From Mobula hypostoma (Eukaryota), in the NCBI RefSeq assembly GCF_963921235.1, contig NC_086101.1, positions 13,454,001-13,518,000 on the forward strand: a stretch of DNA of 64,000 nucleotides. Reading direction: 5' to 3'. Shown here piece after piece: positions 7,474 through 57,839 of this stretch (position 1 is its first letter; every line of letters starts with the position of its first letter). A program made the translations under genes and the position numbers. The notes beneath the pieces are model-generated. The model was not told the DNA's origin and searched no databases. It saw nothing but the letters and a program-made list of their open reading frames with translations.

Positions 7474-7489
7474 GGCTCTGAACAGAGCC
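7474..7489 (-). promoter_or_regulatory. Histone 3' stem-loop (loop variant) of H2B pseudogene
   Basis: Minus strand GGCTCT-GTTC-AGAGCC followed by ACTC, about 40 nt after the H2B-like stop. Confidence 0.75.
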
Positions 7490-15979: not shown

Positions 15980-15995
15980 GGCTCTAAAAAGAGCC
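15980..15995 (-). promoter_or_regulatory. Histone 3' stem-loop (H4)
   Basis: Minus strand GGCTCT-TTTT-AGAGCC, 30 nt after the stop; purine-rich AAAAGGG downstream. Confidence 0.9.
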
Positions 15996-16025
15996 TTTTA
16001 ATGGTGGGAATACCTGCTTTGAGAT

Positions 16026-16358
<333 letters not shown>

Positions 16359-22463: not shown

Positions 22464-22827
22464 ATGTCGACCGCTGATGCTGTTCCCGCAAATGGCACGG
22501 CTGTGGGTTCCAAGAGCATCTTGTCAAAGAAGGGCTCCGAGAAACAGAAGAAGAGCAGGAAGGAGAGCTACAGCACCTACATCTATAAAGTGCTGAAGCA
22601 GGTCCACCCGGACACGAGCCTTTCGTCCAAGGCCATGAGTATCCTCAACTCGTCCGTCGCCGATATCTTCGAGCGAGGCTTCCTTCCTGGTGCAATACAC
22701 CCGCCGCCAGACCATCTCCTCCCGGGACATCCAGAGTGCCGTCCGCTTCCTGCTGCCCGGGGGACTGGCCAAACACGCCGTCTCGGAAGGAACAAAAACG
22801 GTCACCAAATACACGAGCTCCAAGTAG
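22464..22827 (+). pseudogene. H2B: Divergent histone H2B variant with frameshifting deletion
   Basis: Frame 1 ...[39 protein letters not shown]; after about 22674 another frame gives [50 protein letters not shown]. 11 nt (RIAx) are missing. Confidence 0.9.
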
Positions 22828-22858
22828 ATTCTCCCCGAAAAAGATTAAACCACCAAAC

Positions 22859-22874
22859 GGCTCTTCCGCGAGCC
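22859..22874 (+). promoter_or_regulatory. Degenerate histone stem-loop
   Basis: GGCTCT-TCCG-CGAGCC; top pair mismatched and loop non-canonical. Confidence 0.75.
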
Positions 22875-23869
22875 ATCCAATCAAAGTTAAAATGAGATCA
22901 TAACTGATCAGCAAAATACTTGTAGGCGTCGAATTAGAAGCGCATTAGATATAATGAAAACGAAAAAACCAAGGCTGCAATTCTTAAAATAAATACTGGA
23001 AGCACTAATGTCTGACAGCGTTTTGAAAGAAAGTAAACCTTTCAGTTCGAAGACCCTCGTCTCAGTTTGGTATCAAAATAACCTATAGAAAGTAAATTTT
23101 GTCCTATTATTTCAAGTATTCAAATGTAAGGTGCAGCCATGCCTTGGCGTTCACTTGTGAACAATCTGTACTTAGAATCTATATTTAAATTCCACGAGTT
23201 TTGAATATAAAAGAAACCATCCAAATTAATTTTATTATTGGACATTCAAAAGAAAATAGTAAAATCTCATCATCTCCAAGTCTCAATTTATTTCGAATAA
23301 CCAATATCAAATTATGTTTGACCTCAATATCAATTCACATTTTTAACAGACGTCAATAATAATCACGGGATGTGTTTCGGACACATCAACAAAATTCATA
23401 CAAACTTCTGTGTTCCTAATTGCAATAAAATTTGTCCAACAATGTTGGGATACTATTTACACATAAAATTCCTACGGAATTCCATCCCCCAAACCAAGGC
23501 TGACCAAATATTAATGTACAATTTTAAGGAAATTTGTCCAAATCTATGTAACTAGTTTCTGAGAATATTCCTTTGTTTTGTCTATGAAAACGCTTATAAA
23601 CTAAATACAAGGCTAGGCACCCTGACCCTTCGATAATGAGAAAGAGTAATGGAACATCTTCTGTTTGAGATGCTTTGACTTCTCCTGTTGTGCTTCCTGT
23701 TGCCCTGGTCCTCCCAGTGTATGCCAAAAACCTAGTGCGGGTCTTTCTGGCAGCAAATATCAAATACTGTACATCATTTACACATCTTGCTGTAGGCATG
23801 ATATTATCTTGCCAACGTTACCTTGAACCTCTCTTAAAAACTTAGGTTAAAAAACCATCCTTTATTTTC

Positions 23870-23998: not shown

Positions 23999-25523
23999 AT
24001 CCTTTATTTTCTTTCAGTTCTTTGGCAGATTTAAAGCATCTGCTCTGTAACCATCGCATAAGTGTCATCGTAAAGACGACACATCAGTGCCTCTATTTTC
24101 TTAGAAGTTTGCGTAGACTTGGCACATAACCGAAAACCTTGACAAACTTCTGTTAAAGAAGTTAGCTAACGGGTTGTATCAATGCCCAGGAATGGAACGT
24201 AGTGAATCACAGGCACAGACCTTCTCACCATTGAGTACATTTACACAGAGCGCCGCTACAAGAAAGTAGCATCTTTCAACAAAAGACACCCCCCCCCCCC
24301 CACCACCACCACCATCCAGTTCATGCTCTCTTCTCGCTACTGCCTCGCAGGAGGTACAGAAGTCCGAGGTCCCACACCACCAGGTCCAGCAACAGTTACT
24401 ACTCTACAACCATTAGGCTCCTGATCAGCGTGGATAACATCACTCACCACAGCTCTGAACTGATTCTACAACCTACAGATTCTCATTCAAGAACCCTTTA
24501 CGAATCATGTTCTCGGTGTTGTTTTTATTTGCACAGTGGTTGTCAGTCTTTATGGATAGAGTTTCATAAATGTCTACAGTATTTCTCATTTACCGTAAAT
24601 GTCTTCAAGAAAATGAATCTCAAGGTATGGTAACATAGACATACTTTGATAATAAATTTACTTAGAACCTTGATAAAGCTTGCATGCTCCAGACTATGCG
24701 CAAAATGTTTTGGTTTGAAAAACTAACACGTCATTTGAAACAAAGGAAAATGCTGTTTCTTTCATTGGAATTCCAGAGGGCAATTTTAAAAAACTTCCAT
24801 AATGTTAAATTTTAAGTCTGCTTTGGTTACCGTGCTTATTAAGGAAAAGGATTAGAGTTTGGTCTCAACCTAGTTCACTGAAGAAACAGAATTATCGAAG
24901 CAAAACACGCGAAATGCTGGAGAAAGTCATCAAGTCTGACAGCATCTATGGACGGTTGATTTTCTGGGCCGTTTATCCCTTTCAAAAGATGCTGCCTGAC
25001 CTGCTGAGTTCCTCCAGCATTTTGAGAGTGTTAAAATGACGGCACGGAACAGAATATGCACGAATACTAAAATACAATGTGAAAAGCATTATAAAGTGGC
25101 TGGGTCTATAGTCAAGCAGGTGGGGGGGGGTCTAATTAGACAATAAGACATAGGAGCGGAATTGGGCCATTCAGCCCATCGAGTCCGCTCCGCCATTTCA
25201 TGGCTGATCCCGCATCCCATTCAACCCCATAAGACATAGCAGTGGTTCATCAGATTGATTAGATCTCATGTTTAGGATAGTTGGATCTCTCCCTAAGGCG
25301 AAAATTCCGCAGATAAAACACGAGGCAAAATTAATCTTTATAAGGATATTGCAAATGAAATAGTGAATTAGATGAAATATTTCTATTGTATCTAATCTAA
25401 ATGTTAGAGCATCATAGTTGAGTAACAAGTATATGCACTGGGAAGTTTACTGGGGATTTGAAGCCAAACTGGTTGTTCGAGCAGACACGTGGCGCGGTTT
25501 TGCTGCTTTTGCTAATGTTTGGT

Positions 25524-25539
25524 GGCTCTTAAAAGAGCC
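25524..25539 (-). promoter_or_regulatory. Histone 3' stem-loop (H1)
   Basis: Minus strand GGCTCTTTTAAGAGCC followed by ACCA; canonical. Confidence 0.95.
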
Positions 25540-25593
25540 GTTTAATGTAAAGAGCCATTTCTTGCCCTTCGAGGTGACAGTCTGCGGCTGCCT

Positions 25594-26337
25594 CTAGTAG
25601 CGCCGGGATCCGAGTTGGCGTTGGCGCCCCACCGGCCGCCGGGTCCGCCCGCGATTCACTTTGCCTTTGGCAGATTTGTACCGGCGATAGACCTGTGCCG
25701 TCCCAGCCCTGCCTGCTTTAGGCTTGAGTCGGGCACGGGCCTTGGCTTTGGCGCGGGGCCGGGCGCCCGTTTTGGGCCGGCGCTTGAGGGGACGAGCGGT
25801 GGTCTTCCGTGGCTTAGTCTGGCGCCTTGGGCTCCTCTTCTTGTTCCGCGTCCTCTTGGAAGGGGCAGGAGTGCGCCAAGCCGCCTTCCTGCGGCTCGTC
25901 TCTTTCTTCTCCTGCTTGGGAGCCGCCACCCGGTTCAGCTTGAAGGAACCGGCGGCGCCGAGGCCGCTAGTCTTCACCAGCGAGCCCTTCTGCACCAGCT
26001 GGCGTACCGTCAGGTTGACGCGAGCGTTGTTGCGGTTCACATCGTAACCCTTGGCCGACAGCGCTTTCTTCAGGGCTGCCAGCGAGATGCCACGCCTCTC
26101 CTTGGTAGCTGCCGCCAAATTGAGGACGTGGTCGGTGATGGTGGGGCCATTCTGCGGCTTCTTGGGCCGCGGCGGCGCCTTTGGCTGAACCTGTTGCCGC
26201 GACGGTTGTTGCTGCTTCTTTTTCTTCACCGCCCCATCCTTGTCCGGTGCCATCCGACCTTGCGGCGGGGTGGAGCCGCCACCGCCTCCCTTTTCACCGG
26301 AATCGCTGCCGTCTACCGTCTTCTGGTTTTCCGCCAT
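25594..26337 (-). CDS. H1: Histone H1 variant with Arg-rich (protamine-like) C-terminal tail, 247 aa
   Basis: Globular domain GPTITDHVLNLAAATKERRGISLAALKKALSAKGYDVNRNNARVNLTVRQLVQKGSLVKTSGLGAAGSFKLN; start MAENQ set by the TATA box about 80 nt upstream; stem-loop present. Confidence 0.92.
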   Translation of the reverse strand: MAENQKTVDGSDSGEKGGGGGSTPPQGRMAPDKDGAVKKKKQQQPSRQQVQPKAPPRPKKPQNGPTITDHVLNLAAATKERRGISLAALKKALSAKGYDVNRNNARVNLTVRQLVQKGSLVKTSGLGAAGSFKLNRVAAPKQEKKETSRRKAAWRTPAPSKRTRNKKRSPRRQTKPRKTTARPLKRRPKTGARPRAKAKARARLKPKAGRAGTAQVYRRYKSAKGKVNRGRTRRPVGRQRQLGSRRY

Positions 26338-26413
26338 ACCGGAGCCCACCAGAAGCCGCTCTGCTGCCACCTCCTTCTCTCTCTCTCGGCGAGACCCGGC
26401 GCCGACAGCCGTA

Positions 26414-26419
26414 TTTATA
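26414..26419 (-). promoter_or_regulatory. TATA box of H1 variant
   Basis: Minus strand TATAAA with GC-rich upstream sequence. Confidence 0.75.
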
Positions 26420-28289
26420 AGGCGGAGGCGGACGGGGAAGAGCAAACCCGGGTCCTCCCTCTTCCCTCCCAAACTGATCCCGTCGATAATCCTGTGCTTT
26501 TCTGTCATGCTAACCTCCCCTATCCCCGTCAAATCCGCACGCCCCGGCTCCCCAAAGCCATCCATTCCTGATCCGCCAGCTGCAGTTTCTCCGATGCCAG
26601 TCACTTTTTGCACCGGCTGTCCCCCAGTCGAAGAGCATTTCAGGCGGACGATGAAAAACCTGCGTTCTGCTCCTTCTCCTGCTGAAAACGGCCGAAACTT
26701 CATCGGCTTCTCGGGATGAAAGTATTCCTCCTACGCCGGCCAGTTGAAGGTAAAATTTCCAGAAAAAAAGACTCATTTTACAGTTTGTATTTCGCTTGAA
26801 TTCTTTCGTGATTGTGACTACGATAGCACAAATTGTACACCAATTGGAATGCTTAAATTCGATGAGATTAAGCCAATGAGATCTCTTAGCTTGATAAATG
26901 TCCGCGGTATTTTTAAAAAGCGGTATTTTTTAAATTACTAGTTCCTGCTTTTCTGAAAAAGAGTAATAAAAATATTCTAAATTATTATGTTGTTTAGAAC
27001 AGTCTTTCTAAATACGACGGAGCATGGCTTAGCTGAATGATTTGAATCTTTTACCATTATCATTTTAACATTCAGCTATTCTTTACGCAAATCTTCTAAT
27101 AAATAGATAATTTACAGTTATTTTAATACAGATTTCTGACTTGCTTATTTTCGGTACTGTAGTGGAAACGTTTGTCTACACAGATGAACAGATGCATTCT
27201 CCCTTCGTCTGCAGCTAAAATCGTGTCGTCAAGATTCGTCAAGCATGTTCAACGGCCGTGATTATTTCATTTGGCCAGGTAAGTTTTTTTTTGTTATTAT
27301 TTTAGTTCAATCTGCATAACTATAATCGAGAAACCGTGATAACATGGATTATAAACGGGTTTCCGTCTGTTTTCCCGGTTTCCGCACATCAAGCTTCGAA
27401 GTATTTAATCTAGCGTCCTTCATTCGCCCGGGTACTGTGGAGAACAATTTTAACGTATTCTTACAGAGGGAACCCTGAGAAGTGATGCACAGTTAATCGT
27501 TCCCGGCTGGTTTTATTCTTATTTAAAGTCAACAAAAAGTTCCGCTTTAATTATGGCATTGCTTATTTGAATTTAGCAGCAACGAGATTAAACTGAGGGG
27601 TTGGGGAGGAGGTTAGATTATTCCTACATAGCAAAATGTGCAGTAAACGAGGTGTTGTGCAATATTTCTTCAGCTTTTTCAGCAACAATACGAGTATAAA
27701 CGTATATCCACTGACAAGTGTTGGCCAAGAACTTAAAATGATGTCCAAGTGGCTCGAATATTTTGGGTGTCTGTTTAATTATAGCACGTTAATCCTGAAC
27801 TGGATTGATTGAAATCTATACTTCTAGAACAGGATTCAAAAACTTTTATGTATTTACCTGGCCATGTTAACGTTCTTCTATTCTGTTTTGCCAAGCTTTG
27901 TTAATTTCATGGAACGTTAAAGTATACAAAATGTTAATGGTCTGGTTTATATTTCTAACGTGCAAAATCTAAAATGTAGTTACTTTCTTTGTCAATAAAA
28001 GCTTTTGTGAATGCAATTAAGAGTGGAAGATGCAAGTGTTATTAAAGTCAAAACAATCTATATCTTAAAATGACTGTTCTTTTTGATACACTTGTCCCAT
28101 AAGAGAATGCATGTTTCTCGAAAACAATTAAAAACAAACAAACTTCTGCAGTTTCTTTTAGGACACAGAACATAGATCCTGTATGGTACAGGATCAGGCC
28201 CTTTGCCCCACAATGTTGTGGCAGACAAATTTAATTAATAATCAAATGGCTAACTAAACCAATCTCTTCTGCCTACGCAATATCCTGAC

Positions 28290-38310: not shown

Positions 38311-38889
38311 GGCAGATCAGGCCTTGAACTACTAAATGGCCACGCAGTTGCCCTGAAATGAGTCACAGATCTTTCAAAGAAAGTAAGGGCAGCTGCCAAG
38401 AGTAAAACAAAACTCTTTCTACGCGTATTTCTTCATCCATTTCAGCAGATGTCTTCCAAAGGGGGAGAGAATAGAGACGATTCGCCGTTTCCCAAAATCC
38501 GCGGGGTTAAAGCAGCAAGTTCAAAGTCAGGTTTGTTGCAGAGGTATGCGTACGCAGGAAATAAATTCAATGGAAAATAACTTGGTACACAGCATATTAT
38601 AAGCATTAACAGAAACTTAAATTGACATAATTTAACCAAAAAAAAACAATAGAGGAAATTGAAAAGGAAACAAAAAAGTAATACAGCCCGAGGTTAGGTT
38701 CCGGAAGTGTTGAACCCGGCCAAAGGAAAAGTACAGTACTGTATACAACTTGAAGAGCTGCGGGGTGGGCGACGTGCCGGGGCGAACCCAACTCCGTGAG
38801 CAGGAGCAGGTTGGTTCCACCTCGTCCGCTTCCCGCCTTTAAAAGGAGAGCAGCCGCCGCCGCGCCGCGTCTTGAGGCGAGTGCGTGGG

Positions 38890-39582
38890 ATGGCTGACAT
38901 GGTTCCTGCTAACGACGAGGGCGCGGCTCCCAACTGCCCCTTTCCTGCCACCAGTGGCCTGCTCTCGGCTGCCAAGAAGAAGGCAGGTTATAGGGCACAG
39001 AAGAAGAAAGGCACGGTGGCCGCCACCAAGGAGCGCCAGGCGACCAAGCTGGGCGCCGTGAAGACCACCTCGGCCGCCGGCTCCCGCCCTCGTCAGCCGC
39101 CCGACACCTTGCGTTGCAAAGGTTCCGCCGGCAGCTCTGCTTCCGCTCTCCGCTCGAATCAGGAGGGGGAAGGCGAGCAGAGAGAGGTCGAGAAGCAGAG
39201 CAAAAAGGTGGTTCGGAAGAGAGCTGCAGCCGCAAAGCCCACTGCCCGGAAAAGAGCCGCAGCAGCCGAGCCCAGTGCCCGGAAAAGAGCCGCAGCAGCC
39301 GAGCCCAGTGCCCGGAAAAGAGCCGCAGTAGCCGAGCCCGCTGCCCGGAAAAGAGCCGCAGCAACCAAGCCCGCTGCCCGGAAAAGAGCCGCAGCAACCA
39401 AGCCAGCTGCCCGGAAAAGAGCCGCAGCAACCAAGCCAGCTGCCCGGAAAAGAGCCGTAGCAACCAAGCCCACTGCCCGGAAGCCGGCGGCCAAAAGCCC
39501 TCGCAAGTGCACGACCGCCATGGCCAAAAAAGCGCCCAAGCGGCCCGCTGTTTACAGGGCAGCCAGGCCGTCAAACAGATAG
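38890..39582 (+). CDS. H1-derived basic protein with deleted globular domain and 8 x 11-aa repeat, 230 aa
   Basis: Residual H1 blocks VAATKERQ, SAAG, KGS; clear paralogy to 56825-57421; open frame; TTTAAAA about 50 nt upstream; perfect stem-loop 27 nt after the stop. Confidence 0.85.
   Translation: MADMVPANDEGAAPNCPFPATSGLLSAAKKKAGYRAQKKKGTVAATKERQATKLGAVKTTSAAGSRPRQPPDTLRCKGSAGSSASALRSNQEGEGEQREVEKQSKKVVRKRAAAAKPTARKRAAAAEPSARKRAAAAEPSARKRAAVAEPAARKRAAATKPAARKRAAATKPAARKRAAATKPAARKRAVATKPTARKPAAKSPRKCTTAMAKKAPKRPAVYRAARPSNR
39214..39477 (+). repeat. 33-bp coding tandem repeat x8 (RKRAAA[A/T][K/E]P[A/S/T]A)
   Basis: Unit cggaaaagagccgcagcaaccaagcccgctgcc. Confidence 0.95.
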
Positions 39583-39609
39583 ATGGAAGCCAACTATCCG
39601 AACACAAAA

Positions 39610-39625
39610 GGCTCTTTTCAGAGCC
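39610..39625 (+). promoter_or_regulatory. Histone 3' stem-loop
   Basis: AAAA-GGCTCTTTTCAGAGCC-AC; canonical. Confidence 0.95.
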
Positions 39626-40603: not shown

Positions 40604-41008
<405 letters not shown>

Positions 41009-41039
41009 ATACAACAGGCAAAATTTAAAAAAAAACAAA

Positions 41040-41055
41040 GGCTCTTTTAAGAGCC
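41040..41055 (+). promoter_or_regulatory. Histone 3' stem-loop (H2A)
   Basis: GGCTCTTTTAAGAGCC. Confidence 0.95.
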
Positions 41056-45080: not shown

Positions 45081-45457
45081 ATGATGTGAAATTGTTAGGA
45101 GTAGTGGTACTAAAGCCAAGACTCGATCATGTCGCGCTGGATTGTAGTTCCCTGTAGGTCGTATCCATCGCCTTTTTCCCGGAGGGAATTATGCTGAATG
45201 AGTAGGGGCTGGAGCTCCGGTCTATCTGGCGCATTTCTCGAGTATCTAACGGCCCAGATCTTGGGACTGGCGGGTAACGCGGCCCGGGACGACAAGAAGA
45301 TGAGGATCATTTCCCGCTACCTACAGCTCGCCGTCTGCAACGATGAAGAGCCCAACTGTTGTGTGGTGTCACCATCGCCCAGCGTGGAGTACAGCCCAAC
45401 CTTCAGGCTGGGCTGCTGCACAAGAAAATGGGTCAACCCAGCAAAATATACATCTGG
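45081..45457 (+). pseudogene. Histone H2A pseudogene
   Basis: [20 protein letters not shown]...[15 protein letters not shown] / [39 protein letters not shown] / [30 protein letters not shown]; stops and frameshifts; CCAAT 44991 and TATA about 45027; no stem-loop found. Confidence 0.9.
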
Positions 45458-46620
45458 GCGATCAAGCAAACATTCAGACTGGTATATTACAAGCTCACCA
45501 GTCTTATTTCTAAAGGGCCTCAATTTAATTACACGGATTCATGAGAGGCGAAAGCTGGAAATGTGTCCGAATATTCTGCGCCTAGTTCATTTTGGATTTG
45601 TGCTTGACTATCTTTAATTTATTAAATTAATGCAATAAATTTGTTGCAATTAAAAACTTACTTCAATCACCTAAATGTGTGTGTCGGGTTGGGGGATGGT
45701 GAAGGAGAGCATTTAAAACCTGTCTCAGTTTTCACGGAAACTTCCCTTTGAGTTGATCTGTGCGGCAAACTTTTAAACATTCATTAGCGGATAATACAAT
45801 AAGGGAAACCTCAGGAAAGCGAGGAGGGTTGTTCCAAAAGGTTTCGAAAAAAATAACTCCATGACGAACCCTCTGCATGCAGAAGGCGCAGTTTCCTGCC
45901 CAAAGTTCATCAATCCACTCGACAAATATTGCAGTTAAACTTGCCCTCATGCTAATTATAAAATTAATTTCATTCACAAGTCTTAAAATAACATGAACTT
46001 GGAAGGGGCTTTTCACCTTGTAAGTTATTTAATTAGCGGGATGTATCTTCTAAATAAACTCAAAACGGCAAGGACTATCCCATATTGAATACTGGTTAAC
46101 AGCTACCTTAGAAGTTCACAGCAAAAAAGAGTTTTTTGGTGGCAAATGCTTTAATTGGGGAGAAACACATTTTGATAGCATTTTTAAAAACTGCCACCGT
46201 TTAAATATCGTATTTCTGTGGTACAAATACAAATATTCTGGTTACCAAGTAGCAATTGTGTACTAAGAAACGTAGTTTGCATACAGTTCCTCTACATGAA
46301 TTCAAAAGTGACCAATCAATGGGTTTCATTTTAACCAATGATATTATTTCACGAACCACCAATCAGAATTTGTAATTGCGTCCCACGGAATTTGCCCAGT
46401 ACCCAGAAAGCAGAAGCTGACGTAAAGGCGGGTGAACCAATGAGAACGTAGTCTTTCACCCAATGACGGCGACGTTGTTAGATTTTGCATTTTGACAAAG
46501 ATGTTTGGCAAAAGATACGTATTCACTCACATATCTAATAAAAAAAAGATATTTAAATGCAATCGTTTCAACCGTCCCGGTTTATATGGCGCTGGTGAAG
46601 CACAGCGACAACTTGCTGGT

Positions 46621-51909: not shown

Positions 51910-52224
<315 letters not shown>

Positions 52225-52257
52225 AAGATAAATCGAGCAACTGTTTAGGAAACCAAA

Positions 52258-52273
52258 GGTTCTTTTAAGAACC
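52258..52273 (+). promoter_or_regulatory. Histone 3' stem-loop (compensatory variant)
   Basis: GGTTCT-TTTA-AGAACC; the third pair is T-A rather than C-G. Confidence 0.92.
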
Positions 52274-56786: not shown

Positions 56787-56802
56787 GGCTCTGAAAAGAG
56801 CC
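56787..56802 (-). promoter_or_regulatory. Histone 3' stem-loop
   Basis: Minus strand AAA-GGCTCTTTTCAGAGCC. Confidence 0.93.
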
Positions 56803-56824
56803 TTTGTTTTCAGATGCTTGACCT

Positions 56825-57421
56825 CTATTTCCGTTTGACAGCCCGGTGGCCACGCCCGGCAGTCCGGGAAGCAGCGGGACGCTTGGGCGCTTTTTTGGCC
56901 TTGGTCGTCGTGCGCTTGGTGGGACTCTTGGCACGATTCCGGGCAGCGGGCTTGGCTGCCGCCGATCTCTTCGGAGCCGTTTTTCTGGTCGCTGCTTTCT
57001 TCTTCGTCCCTCCTTTCCTCCGGTCCTCGGACTCTCCCTGCTCGCCCTGCGCTTCCCGATCCGGGTGGGGAGCGGAAGCGGAGCTGCCGGCGACAGTGCC
57101 TTCCACAGTGGAACCCTTGTTAGGCAAGGTGTCGGCCGGCAGGTTGGAGCGGGCGACGGCCTTGTCCGCCTCGTAGCCAGCGGCCGAGATGGGTTTCTTC
57201 ACACCGCCCAGCTTAGGAGCCTGTCGCTCTTTGGTGGCGGCCACCACCTCCGCGATCTGCTCAACCACCATGGCCGCCGTCGCCTTTTGTGACCGATGGA
57301 CCGCCTTCTTCTTAGCCGCAGTACCGACCGCGGCCGAAGGGGCGGCGAAGTCGGAACCGGCAGGAAGATCGGGAGGAAGAGCGGCGGGAGTATCAGCCTT
57401 GGCGGGAACGACCTCAGCCAT
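56825..57421 (-). CDS. H1-derived protein with degenerate globular domain, 198 aa
   Basis: MAE start; VVEQIAEVVAATKERQAPKLGGVKKPISAAGYEADKAVARSNLPADTLPNKGSTVEGTVAGSSASA is colinear with the H1 winged helix; K/A/P/R tail; stem-loop; CCAAT and GC boxes at 57529-57588. Confidence 0.88.
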   Translation of the reverse strand: MAEVVPAKADTPAALPPDLPAGSDFAAPSAAVGTAAKKKAVHRSQKATAAMVVEQIAEVVAATKERQAPKLGGVKKPISAAGYEADKAVARSNLPADTLPNKGSTVEGTVAGSSASAPHPDREAQGEQGESEDRRKGGTKKKAATRKTAPKRSAAAKPAARNRAKSPTKRTTTKAKKAPKRPAASRTAGRGHRAVKRK

Positions 57422-57839
57422 GAGAACCTTCCTGATCCGCGACGCCCCGCCTGGGTGGGGCGAGCAGCGGGACCCTCGCACATAATAGGGAAAGGTGGAC
57501 GTCGTAGAGCAAACCTGCTCGGAGCCTATCCAATCCCCTGCTACGGCGCTCCACTAGGTCCCGCCCTTCCCTGTAACTCTGACCAATCCACTGCTCGTAC
57601 CTGTGAGCCAGTGCCGGAGGGAGGTCGCCGATCCTGCTGGTCATTGTTAACGTGGAATGCCGCAGGTCTGGCGGGCGGAGAGGAAACCCGGTTGTAGAAG
57701 CCTCAACCCTGCTTACAGCTACCCAGCAAACACGCGTCGTCGCTCGGCAGGAGATTGACTGCAGATTGCTGCAACATTCATGGATTCGTGGTCTTGGACT
57801 ATTTTTGTGTTCTCTGTATTTTACTGATGAACTCCGGTT

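What the first reader, a model, noticed from the sequence alone, without database searches (positions are those of the whole stretch)
25524..26420. Arginine-rich H1: candidate protamine-like sperm nuclear basic protein with a histone stem-loop
Seen: an intact winged helix, a long Q/P/G-rich N-terminus, and a roughly 112-aa tail with about 28 Arg versus 18 Lys (hand count), RR doublets, SPRR, Trp and Tyr. Known: somatic H1 tails are Lys/Ala/Pro with almost no Arg, and a Lys-to-Arg shift marks H1-derived protamine-like (PL) proteins. Inference: a PL/H1t-like protein still under replication-type 3' processing.
Basis: partly seen in the sequence, partly recalled or inferred. Interest (0 to 1): 0.8.

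Follow-up and report, generated by a model that had tools for sequence, protein, structure and literature searches.

The report
Arginine-rich linker histone of rays and sharks

Summary
On the minus strand lies an intronless 247-codon H1 gene (CDS 25594-26337). It has a TATA box (26412-26419), a canonical winged helix (Pfam 6.6e-15; AF2 pLDDT 76-91) and a 112-aa tail with 28 Arg and 18 Lys. An Rfam-validated histone stem-loop sits at 25499-44.

More than 20 multi-copy somatic H1 genes of the same genome have 0-1 Arg in their tails. The gene is single-copy, CpG-rich and lies in a cluster of divergent stem-loop histone genes.

Full-length orthologues exist in stingrays, skates and a bullhead shark. 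Tail R/(K+R) is 0.52-0.67 in all of them. The stem-loop, the downstream element and the core promoter are conserved in two skates.

A globular-domain tree places it in a cartilaginous-fish-only clade. It is not orthologous to H1t, H5/H1.0 or H1x.

Expression evidence is thin. RNA-type contigs of two related species cover it, one reading past the stem-loop. Two RNA-type runs of the window's own species do not. Tissue labels were hidden.

The sperm-protein reading is therefore untested. By my recollection of the literature, cartilaginous fishes package sperm with true protamines. My best reading is a lineage-specific, strongly condensing H1 variant with restricted expression, possibly in the germ line.

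The parts
26421..26449 (-). Conserved proximal promoter element (GC-rich, contains CGTCCGCC) directly upstream of the TATA box
   Evidence: Nearly invariant between the window and two skate orthologues. The CGTCCGC core also lies upstream of the TATA-like box of this genome's somatic H1 genes and of paralogues L016 and L006.
26412..26419 (-). TATA box (TATAAATA on the minus strand), 75-82 nt upstream of the ATG
   Evidence: Read directly. Aligned to ATATAAA/ATAAAAG in the skates.
26493..26499 (-). Degenerate H1 box (AAGCACA instead of AAACACA)
   Evidence: Somatic H1 genes of this genome carry AAACACA at a comparable distance from the CGTCCGC element. It is not conserved in the skates, so this part is weak.
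26146..26337 (-). N-terminal domain, aa 1-64: acidic start, Gly run, TPPQGR motif, Lys and Gln/Pro-rich stretch
   Evidence: Composition. The MAENQK start, the Gly run, TPPQxR..PDK and the KKKK-Q run are conserved in skate, stingray and Heterodontus orthologues.
25933..26145 (-). Globular winged-helix domain, aa 65-135
   Evidence: PF00538 E 6.6e-15. Best solved relative is chicken GH1 (1ghc), E 3.9e-21, against about 1e-6 for H5/H1.0. The AF2 model shows three helices and a beta hairpin at pLDDT 76-91. dN/dS against skates is 0.35-0.41.
25597..25932 (-). Arginine-rich C-terminal tail, aa 136-247: R28, K18; one SPRR; conserved blocks RQTKPRKTTARPLKRRPK, VYRRYKS and RPVGRQRQ
   Evidence: 30 of the gene's 36 Arg codons are CGN. 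No alternative frame reads as a Lys-rich tail. dN/dS against skates is 0.52-0.66. Predicted disordered.
25594..25596 (-). Stop codon (TAG)
25565..25574 (-). Conserved 3'-UTR block CCTCGAAGGG
   Evidence: Identical apart from one base in the window and both skate orthologues. Function unknown.
25524..25539 (-). Histone 3' stem-loop (6-bp stem, UUUA loop)
   Evidence: Rfam RF00032, 38.0 bits, E 1.5e-7, over 25499-25544. The skate orthologues score 36.1 and 38.7 bits.
25497..25510 (-). Purine-rich histone downstream element candidate (AAAAGCAGCAAAAC), 14 nt after the stem-loop
   Evidence: Conserved as AAAACAGCAAA(A/T)C in both skates. Reading it as a U7-binding element is an inference from its position and composition.

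Best explanation
SHOWN. The stretch is a functional, single-copy, intronless gene for a linker histone H1 variant.
- It has a canonical H1.1-5-type winged helix.
- Its C-terminal tail has about 60% of its basic residues as arginine.
- The variant lineage is restricted to cartilaginous fishes. It is at least as old as the shark-ray split, and a related form exists in a chimaera.
- Every orthologue examined keeps the high arginine share.
- The gene carries replication-dependent histone signals: an H1-type core promoter, a 3' stem-loop and a downstream element.
- It sits in a cluster of other divergent stem-loop histone genes.

INFERRED.
- The globular domain seats the protein on the nucleosome dyad like any H1.
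- The Arg-rich, almost acid-free tail (41% basic, 2 Glu, 0 Asp) binds linker DNA more tightly than the Lys/Ala tails of somatic H1. It would therefore condense chromatin more strongly, as in avian H5 and H1-derived sperm proteins.
- The single SPRR site and the TP motifs allow phosphorylation to control binding.
- Expression is restricted to particular cells. Spermatogenic cells, in an H1t-like or early PL-like role before the protamines arrive, are the single most likely setting. The protein is not expected to be the final sperm-packaging protein.
- Transcripts end at the stem-loop in cycling cells. At least in one relative, transcripts also exist as longer read-through RNA.
For: Gene integrity and domains.

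Contrast within the genome: the sampled somatic H1 tails have K42-45 and R0-1; this tail has K18 and R28. The gene is single-copy.

Conservation:
- Orthologues exist in Hypanus, Hemitrygon (252 aa, 83% identical over the full length), three skates and Heterodontus.
- Tail R/(K+R) is 0.52-0.67 in all of them. The paralogue group has 0.34-0.57 and a chimaera homologue 0.5.
- The chondrichthyan-only clade has 99/75 support and is separate from bony-vertebrate H1 and from H1.0 and H1x.
- dN/dS is below 1 in every domain.
- 30 of 36 Arg codons are CGN, so the Arg-rich state is old, and CpG o/e is 0.93 against 0.6 in the flanks.

Signals: stem-loop, downstream element, 3'-UTR block and core promoter are conserved between stingray and skates. 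All neighbouring histone genes carry stem-loops.

Transcription:
- One relative has a 2282-nt contig at depth 91 that is colinear with 24997-26715 and continues upstream.
- A second relative has a 588-nt contig inside the CDS.
- Two RNA-type runs of the window's own species show no contig on the gene, apart from faint cover of the conserved globular part.
Against: - No tissue label was available, so germ-line expression is a guess from analogy (H1t, PL-I, H5).
- The empty runs of the window's species may only reflect poly(A) selection, which loses stem-loop mRNAs. No control gene could be laid.
- dN/dS (0.35-0.66) is only modestly above that of somatic H1 paralogues (0.2-0.5). The fast evolution typical of reproductive proteins is not clearly seen.
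- The relative's contig runs about 500 nt past the stem-loop and more than 380 nt upstream of the TATA box. It could be an unrelated or antisense transcript rather than the mRNA. Contigs carry no strand.
- The Hypanus gene model spans 8 kb and has a different N-terminus.
- Tighter DNA binding by the tail is inferred from composition and was not measured.
Confidence: 0.45

Rival explanations
1. One reading: a true protamine-like (PL-I type) sperm nuclear basic protein that replaces histones and persists in mature ray sperm chromatin, whole or after cleavage of its tail.
For: It has an H1 winged helix, a 41% basic tail, R/(K+R) of 0.61 and an SPRR motif. That composition lies within the PL range as I recall it (Ausio 1999, listed). 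The arginine enrichment is conserved. No RNA contig was seen in two runs of the window's own species.
Against: From my own knowledge, chondrichthyan sperm contain true protamines preceded by small spermatid-specific proteins (Gusse & Chevaillier 1978/1981 and Saperas et al. 1997, reference list). The tail-only search found no small relatives. The tail contains no cysteine. No sperm or testis data were available.
Confidence: 0.12
2. A differentiation-linked somatic H1 for terminally condensed nuclei, such as nucleated erythrocytes or other quiescent cells. This would be a functional analogue of avian H5.
For: H5 is the classic Arg-enriched H1 of condensed somatic nuclei (own knowledge). The relative's long transcript reading past the stem-loop is what replication-type histone genes do in non-dividing cells. 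The gene is not seen in some RNA samples.
Against: The globular domain is of the H1.1-5 type, not the H5/H1.0 type (3.9e-21 against about 1e-6). Two H1.0-like genes without stem-loops already exist in the genome. The conserved stem-loop and downstream element point to S-phase-type processing.
Confidence: 0.22
3. A maternal or cleavage-stage H1, stored in oocytes and used in early embryos, encoded in a cluster of embryonic-type histone genes.
For: It sits among divergent H4, H2A and H1-like genes that all carry stem-loops. This recalls stage-specific histone sets. It is absent from the adult-type RNA runs examined.
Against: Known oocyte H1s (B4/H1oo/BigH1, own knowledge) are long, less basic and rich in acidic residues. 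This tail has 2 acidic residues in 112. The globular domain is unlike the H1oo type as I recall it. That comparison was not made here.
Confidence: 0.1
4. A decaying or functionless duplicate whose arginine content is a by-product of GC-biased composition.
For: The gene's GC is 0.65 and GC3 0.76, against flanks of 0.38-0.39. Pseudogenes lie next to it (frameshifted H2B-like and H2A fragments). The tail's dN/dS reaches 0.66.
Against: Open frames are intact in at least seven species across the shark-ray split. Motifs, promoter and 3' signals are conserved. dN/dS is below 1. H1.0 and H1x, with an even higher GC3 (0.85), have only 2-3 Arg in their tails. RNA contigs exist in relatives.
Confidence: 0.03

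Closest known systems
Replication-dependent somatic H1 of vertebrates (H1.1-H1.5; chicken GH1, PDB 1ghc)
   Same: The globular domain matches chicken GH1 best of all solved chains, over aa 64-135 (3.9e-21). The gene is intronless, has a stem-loop and downstream element, an H1-type core promoter, and lies in a histone cluster.
   Different: Somatic tails are Lys/Ala/Pro with 0-1 Arg. This tail has 28 Arg, plus Trp and Tyr, and conserved non-repetitive motifs. The gene is single-copy. It has a long Gly/Gln-rich N-terminus. Its H1 box is degenerate.
Mammalian testis H1t (H1-6)
   Same: H1t is a variant H1 with an H1.1-5-type globular domain. It is encoded in a replication-type cluster, has a stem-loop and has somewhat more Arg than somatic H1 (own knowledge).
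   Different: H1t is confined to mammals (own knowledge). The present gene belongs to a cartilaginous-fish-only clade, so any similarity in role would be convergent. Its arginine share is far higher. No H1t sequence was in the tree.
PL-I protamine-like sperm proteins (bivalves, tunicates, some fishes)
   Same: Both have an H1 winged helix and a Lys+Arg-rich tail with raised Arg, with SPKK/SPRR-type motifs. PL-I is the proposed intermediate in the H1-to-protamine route (Ausio 1999 and Saperas & Ausio 2013, listed).
   Different: Presence in sperm defines PL proteins and is unknown here. No specific sequence kinship was found. The teleost hit that NCBI names 'protamine-like' (P0083) falls among bony-fish H1. 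The tail shows no sign of a frameshift origin.
Avian H5 / vertebrate H1.0
   Same: Both show a Lys-to-Arg shift in a linker histone linked to strong chromatin condensation.
   Different: The globular class differs (E about 1e-6). H5/H1.0 genes are polyadenylated and lack a stem-loop. The genome's own H1.0-like genes have R2 in their tails and no stem-loop.
Paralogue group B of the same chondrichthyan clade (own genome L016; Hypanus P0016; shark P0008-P0014)
   Same: Both have the same N-terminal start, a near-identical globular domain, a stem-loop and an Arg-enriched tail (R/(K+R) 0.34-0.57). They share the C-terminal RPVGRPRK-type motif.
   Different: Group B has a long Ala/Pro/Ser linker after the globular domain and lacks the Gly/Gln-rich N-terminus. 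It keeps an AT-hook-like GRP core. In the stingray copy of the present gene that core has changed to GRQ.

Membership tests
Linker histone H1/H5 (PF00538) | Winged-helix globular domain matching the family profile over its full length | tested here: met
   55.5 bits against a cut-off of 22.4, profile positions 2-74 of 74. The AF2 model shows three helices and a beta hairpin, pLDDT 76-91.
Linker histone H1/H5 (PF00538) | Tripartite layout: short N-terminus, globular domain, long basic disordered C-terminal tail | tested here: met
   64 + 71 + 112 aa. The tail is 41% K+R and predicted disordered.
Replication-dependent histone gene | Intronless CDS followed by the conserved 3' stem-loop instead of a poly(A) signal | tested here: met
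   RF00032, 38 bits (gathering score 34), starting 54 nt after the stop. The next AATAAA lies 1065 nt downstream. The stem-loop is conserved in skates.
Replication-dependent histone gene | Purine-rich downstream element for U7 snRNP | tested here: inconclusive
   A conserved AAA(A/G)CAGCAAAAC block lies 14 nt after the stem-loop in three species. Pairing to the species' U7 was not tested.
Replication-dependent histone gene | mRNA actually ends at the stem-loop and is coupled to S phase | tested here: inconclusive
   A relative's contig runs about 500 nt past the stem-loop. Contigs cannot show RNA ends. No raw reads were available.
Protamine-like (PL-I) sperm nuclear basic proteins | H1-related globular core with a Lys+Arg-rich, Arg-enriched tail | tested here: met
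Protamine-like (PL-I) sperm nuclear basic proteins | Major basic protein of spermatid or sperm chromatin; testis-specific expression | not testable with these tools
   Tissue labels of the runs were hidden. Only tissue-blind contigs were available. No proteomic data were available.
Mammalian H1t / HILS1 / H1fnt | Orthology (shared descent) with the mammalian testis variants | tested here: inconclusive
   The gene lies in a chondrichthyan-only clade (99/75), apart from tetrapod and teleost H1. No H1t, HILS1 or H1fnt sequence was in the tree, so non-orthology rests on this clade and on their mammalian restriction (own knowledge).
H5 / H1.0 replacement H1 | H5/H1.0-type globular domain and a polyadenylated gene without a stem-loop | tested here: not met
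   E about 1e-6 to H5/H1.0 against 3.9e-21 to GH1. The own-genome H1.0 pair branches apart. A stem-loop is present.
AT-hook proteins | GRP core flanked by Arg/Lys | tested here: not met
   Relatives carry KRPVGRPRK, but this protein has RRPVGRQRQ. No Pfam AT-hook hit was found even in the relatives.

The most novel reading that the evidence does not exclude
The protein is a spermatid or sperm chromatin component of rays and sharks: an H1-derived, Arg-rich intermediate that acts between histones and protamines, perhaps after cleavage into smaller basic peptides. That would place a living H1-to-PL step at the base of jawed vertebrates. It would be encoded in a small cluster of germ-line histone variants (two variant H4, an H2A, an H2B-like gene and two H1 derivatives without a recognisable globular domain), all still under stem-loop control.
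Probability: 0.1. Interest if true: 0.8.

Novelty: new variant of a known kind. Interest (0 to 1): 0.48.

Why it matters
Linker-histone variants with arginine-rich tails are the proposed starting point of sperm protamine-like proteins and protamines. In vertebrates, no such H1 with replication-type control has been described outside mammals' mildly Arg-enriched H1t, as far as the searchable literature shows.

A conserved, single-copy, 60%-Arg H1 lineage in cartilaginous fishes gives a concrete gene to test. Does strong Lys-to-Arg replacement in an otherwise canonical H1 accompany germ-cell or other extreme chromatin condensation at the base of jawed vertebrates?

It also shows that in these fishes the canonical bony-vertebrate-type globular domain is kept by the variant clade, while the multi-copy somatic H1s have diverged. 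If expression turns out to be ordinary, the gene is simply an unusual H1 subtype.

Tried and rejected
- RNA evidence. Both run searches and the one read-laying run were used. No run is on record as RNA, tissue names are coded and only contigs were available. Neither strand, ends, level nor tissue could be read. No control histone gene could be laid.
- Tail-only protein search. It was meant to reach small sperm proteins excluded by the length filter of the full-length search. Nothing scored E <= 0.01.
- ESM Atlas look-up with the tail. It returned only weak H1-tail look-alikes (score 0.80), which is uninformative.
- Frameshift origin of the Arg-rich tail from a Lys-rich one (the tunicate mechanism). 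Rejected: no other frame reads Lys-rich, and 30 of 36 Arg codons are CGN.
- GC bias as the cause of the arginine content. Rejected: H1.0 and H1x have higher GC3 but only 2-3 Arg in their tails.
- Fast evolution as a germ-line signature. Inconclusive: dN/dS is 0.35-0.66 against 0.2-0.5 for somatic paralogues.
- Hypanus DNA, wanted for a close-species dN/dS.
- The exact protein is not in the collection.
- Literature. Searches on chondrichthyan H1 variants found nothing on this protein, and a catshark testis proteomics paper does not mention linker histones.
- AT-hook. Seen by eye in relatives, without Pfam support, and lost in this protein.
- The long upstream in-frame ORF extension (to 26703). 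Rejected as coding: it runs through the TATA box, and orthologues start at MAENQK.
Full report
**What is there.** Between them lies one uninterrupted ORF. The conserved start is the ATG at 26337 and the stop is at 25594-25596, giving 247 residues.

The mechanical ORF extends further upstream, to 26703. That extension runs through the TATA box. Orthologues in skates and in the red stingray begin at the same MAENQK/MSENQK, so I take 26337 as the start.

- N-terminus of 64 aa, rich in Gly, Lys, Gln and Pro.
- Globular domain of 71 aa.
- Tail of 112 aa with 28 Arg, 18 Lys, one Trp, three Tyr, six RR doublets and one SPRR.

Pfam finds a full-length Linker_histone domain (E 6.6e-15). An AlphaFold2 model built on a 12-sequence alignment gives three helices and a beta hairpin at pLDDT 76-91, with both tails disordered. 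Among solved structures the best match is chicken GH1 (3.9e-21), then human H1.1-H1.4. H5/H1.0 score about 1e-6 and H1x 1.6e-4. The globular domain is therefore of the ordinary H1.1-5 class.

**3' end and promoter.** Rfam places the histone 3' stem-loop at 25499-25544 on the minus strand (38.0 bits, gathering score 34). The stem-loop starts 54 nt after the stop.

I obtained DNA of two skate orthologues, L031 (Leucoraja) and L032 (Rhinoraja). Both have a stem-loop above Rfam's gathering score. The three species also share:
- a purine-rich block, AAA(A/G)CAGCAAAAC, 14 nt after the loop, where a U7-binding downstream element is expected;
- a CCTCGAAGGG block in the short 3' UTR.

Upstream, a GC-rich element containing CGTCCGCC abuts the TATA box and is nearly invariant between stingray and skates. 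Its core also lies in front of the TATA-like box of this genome's somatic H1 genes. Those genes carry a perfect H1 box (AAACACA); the present gene has AAGCACA at a comparable distance. The control regions are therefore of the H1 replication type, with a weakened H1 box.

**How unusual the tail is.** A scan of the whole 3.48-Gb assembly found 45 H15-domain matches. I extracted the open frames of 29 of them.
- The multi-copy genes on four contigs have tails with 42-45 Lys and 0-1 Arg. Nearly all have stem-loops.
- Two H1.0-like genes have 2 Arg and no stem-loop.
- An H1x-like gene has 3 Arg.
- Three genes are Arg-enriched, and all lie on the window's contig: L006 (K27/R14), L016 (K25/R12) and the present gene (K18/R28).

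The present gene is single-copy. Its nearest paralogue, L016, is 45% identical.

The arginine content is not a side-effect of base composition. H1.0 and H1x have a higher GC3 (0.85 against 0.76) and almost no Arg. 30 of the gene's 36 Arg codons are CGN, and no other reading frame of the tail is Lys-rich. Neither recent AAG-to-AGG changes nor a frameshift explains the tail.

The gene is a CpG-rich island (GC 0.65, CpG o/e 0.93) in AT-rich flanks (GC 0.38-0.39, CpG o/e about 0.6).

**Relatives.** The database search returned cartilaginous-fish proteins first: Hypanus sabinus (88% over the aligned part), skates (53-57%) and Heterodontus (48%). These were followed by a second group from sharks and rays, and only then by H1 of bony vertebrates.

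A look-up of the Hypanus cluster added a full-length Hemitrygon akajei protein (252 aa, 83% identical end to end). All carry only automatic names ('histone H1-like' or 'uncharacterized protein').

The alignment shows two paralogue groups.
- Group A (the window, stingrays, skates, Heterodontus) shares the Gly run, TPPQxR..PDK, a Lys/Gln stretch, and tail blocks such as SP(R/K)RQTKPR(K/R)T.ARP(L/F)KRRP and VYR(R/K)(Y/H).
- Group B has a long Ala/Pro/Ser linker after the globular domain.
- Group B, the skate and Heterodontus members of group A (and the stingrays in degenerate form) end with an RPVGRPRK-like motif. By eye it looks like an AT-hook. In the stingrays the GRP core has become GRQ. Pfam does not call an AT-hook in any of them.

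Tail R/(K+R) is 0.52-0.67 in all group A proteins, 0.34-0.57 in group B and 0.5 in a chimaera homologue. It is 0-0.05 in somatic H1 and H1.0-type tails of this genome and 0-0.10 in the ordinary bony-vertebrate H1s sampled; a teleost H1 that NCBI names 'protamine-like' has 0.26.

A maximum-likelihood tree of the globular domain (80 columns, so poorly resolved inside clades) gives the following:
- All these proteins, with the chimaera sequence, form one clade (99/75).
- L006 is a possible sister (84/88).
- The clade is separate from teleost and tetrapod H1, from the own-genome somatic H1s (a long branch) and from H1.0/H1x.
- Groups A and B are not separated by the globular domain. The two Heterodontus copies are almost identical there, which suggests gene conversion or repeated duplication.

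The lineage is therefore specific to cartilaginous fishes, and I do not regard it as an orthologue of H1t. No H1t sequence was in the tree; this rests on H1t being confined to mammals (own knowledge).

**Constraint.** Nei-Gojobori dN/dS between the window and the skates is 0.28-0.32 for the N-terminus, 0.35-0.41 for the globular domain and 0.52-0.66 for the tail. Somatic H1 paralogues within this genome mostly give 0.2-0.5. The gene is under purifying selection. It evolves somewhat faster than somatic H1, but not so much faster that a reproductive role can be read from the rate.

**Expression.** This is the weak point.
- The run index found the DNA runs of the window's species, three RNA-type runs of that species with none of the gene's words, and RNA-type runs of two relatives with a share equal to that of the relative's own DNA.
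- Laid on 24500-27500, relative B gives one 2282-nt contig at depth 91. It is colinear with 24997-26715 and picks up again beyond 27217.
- That contig covers the whole gene, about 500 nt past the stem-loop and more than 380 nt upstream of the TATA box.
- Relative A gives a 588-nt contig at depth 6.8 inside the CDS.
- The two runs of the window's own species have no contig on the gene. There is only faint cover of about 100 nt of the conserved globular part, probably from a paralogue.
- Depth 91 in an assembly of about 110 Mb cannot be single-copy genomic DNA, so an RNA covering the gene exists in relative B.

Contigs carry no strand, ends or tissue. Absence in the other runs may simply reflect poly(A) selection.

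The Hypanus gene model spans 8 kb and has a different N-terminus. This also hints at longer transcripts. In the window the first AATAAA after the stem-loop is 1065 nt downstream.

**Interpretation.** What is shown is a conserved, functional, Arg-rich H1 variant gene with replication-type signals.

That it binds the nucleosome like H1 follows from the canonical globular domain. That its tail binds DNA more tightly and condenses chromatin more strongly follows from established behaviour of Arg-rich versus Lys-rich basic proteins (H5, PL proteins, protamines). It was not measured.

The sperm reading rests only on analogy. From my own knowledge, dogfish and other chondrichthyans replace histones first by small spermatid-specific proteins and then by true, partly cysteine-containing protamines (Gusse & Chevaillier 1978/1981 and Saperas et al. 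1997, cited in the paper read). This protein is therefore unlikely to be the final sperm-packaging protein. A search with the tail alone found no small relatives.

My estimates for where the variant acts:
- Male germ line (H1t-like or early PL-like role): about 0.45.
- Somatic H5-like role: 0.22.
- True PL protein of sperm: 0.12.
- Maternal or embryonic role: 0.1.
- Functionless relic: 0.03.

**Context.** The window is a loose cluster of divergent histone genes, each with a stem-loop:
- two variant H4 genes that differ from each other at five positions, one with a compensatory change in its stem;
- an H2A with an unusual C-terminus;
- a frameshifted H2B-like ORF, whose counterpart beside the Hypanus orthologue is an intact 135-aa histone;
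- an H2A fragment;
- two H1-derived genes that no longer match PF00538.

Earlier first-stage notes on this window had flagged three of these. Whether the cluster is a coordinated set of stage-specific variants or a mix of innovation and decay is open.

**Novelty.** I found no paper on this lineage. The proteins exist only as automatic predictions. It is a new variant within a well-known family, not a new kind of system.

Noticed in passing
window 15980-16343 (-) and 51913-52273 (+): Two H4 genes differ from each other at five residues (S/T after the Met, EEM/EEV, KRR/KRK, TIT/TVT, ALD/AMD). Both have stem-loops. The second stem-loop is GGTTCTTTTAAGAACC, with a compensatory stem change. Variation in H4 is rare.
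   Followed up: partly
window 38872-39625 (+) and 56787-57481 (-): Two paralogous H1-derived ORFs each have a perfect stem-loop (GGCTCTTTTCAGAGCC) but no Pfam Linker_histone match. One has a run of ARKRAAA(A/T)(K/E)P repeats. Both tails are Arg-enriched.
   Followed up: partly
window 22464-22895 (+): An H2B-like ORF goes out of frame after ...DIFER, so it is an apparent frameshifted pseudogene. It lies tail-to-tail with the H1 gene. In Hypanus an intact 135-aa histone gene occupies the same relative position.
   Followed up: no
window 40619-41055 (+) and 45198-45617 (+): An H2A gene with an unusual C-terminal end (…[11 protein letters not shown]) and a stem-loop at 41040-41055. A degraded H2A fragment lies 4 kb further on.
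   Followed up: no
G000 contigs C82, C80, C45 and C22 (loci L008-L030): The multi-copy, Lys-rich somatic H1 genes of this genome have a globular domain that is strongly diverged from the bony-vertebrate H1 consensus (a long branch). The Arg-enriched variant clade keeps the consensus-like domain.
   Followed up: partly
G000:C12:12.68-12.75 Mb (L006, L016 and two further matches): A second group of variant H1 genes lies about 0.7 Mb from the window on the same contig. L016 is group B (K25/R12, ends with an RPVGRPRK AT-hook-like motif). L006 is a third type (K27/R14, acidic C-terminus). Both have stem-loops.
   Followed up: partly
window 24601-24701 and 24904-25206: Short interspersed repeats reach summed contig depths of thousands to hundreds of thousands in all four RNA-type runs, with many joints and loose ends. 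The relative's long contig over the H1 gene stops at the edge of this repeat.
   Followed up: no
window 7474-7489 (-): An orphan stem-loop-like palindrome, GGCTCTGTTCAGAGCC, with no histone ORF beside it, inside retroelement-rich sequence.
   Followed up: no
G000:C18:334898-335017 (-): A 40-codon fragment is 85% identical to aa 89-128 of this protein. It is probably a dispersed pseudogene piece.
   Followed up: no
Rhinoraja longicauda and Leucoraja erinacea orthologues (P0003, P0004, P0007; L031): The skates have several group A copies. Some tails are expanded by KREKKAG(A/T)ARRKV-type repeats, and some annotated N-termini are probably mis-modelled.
   Followed up: no
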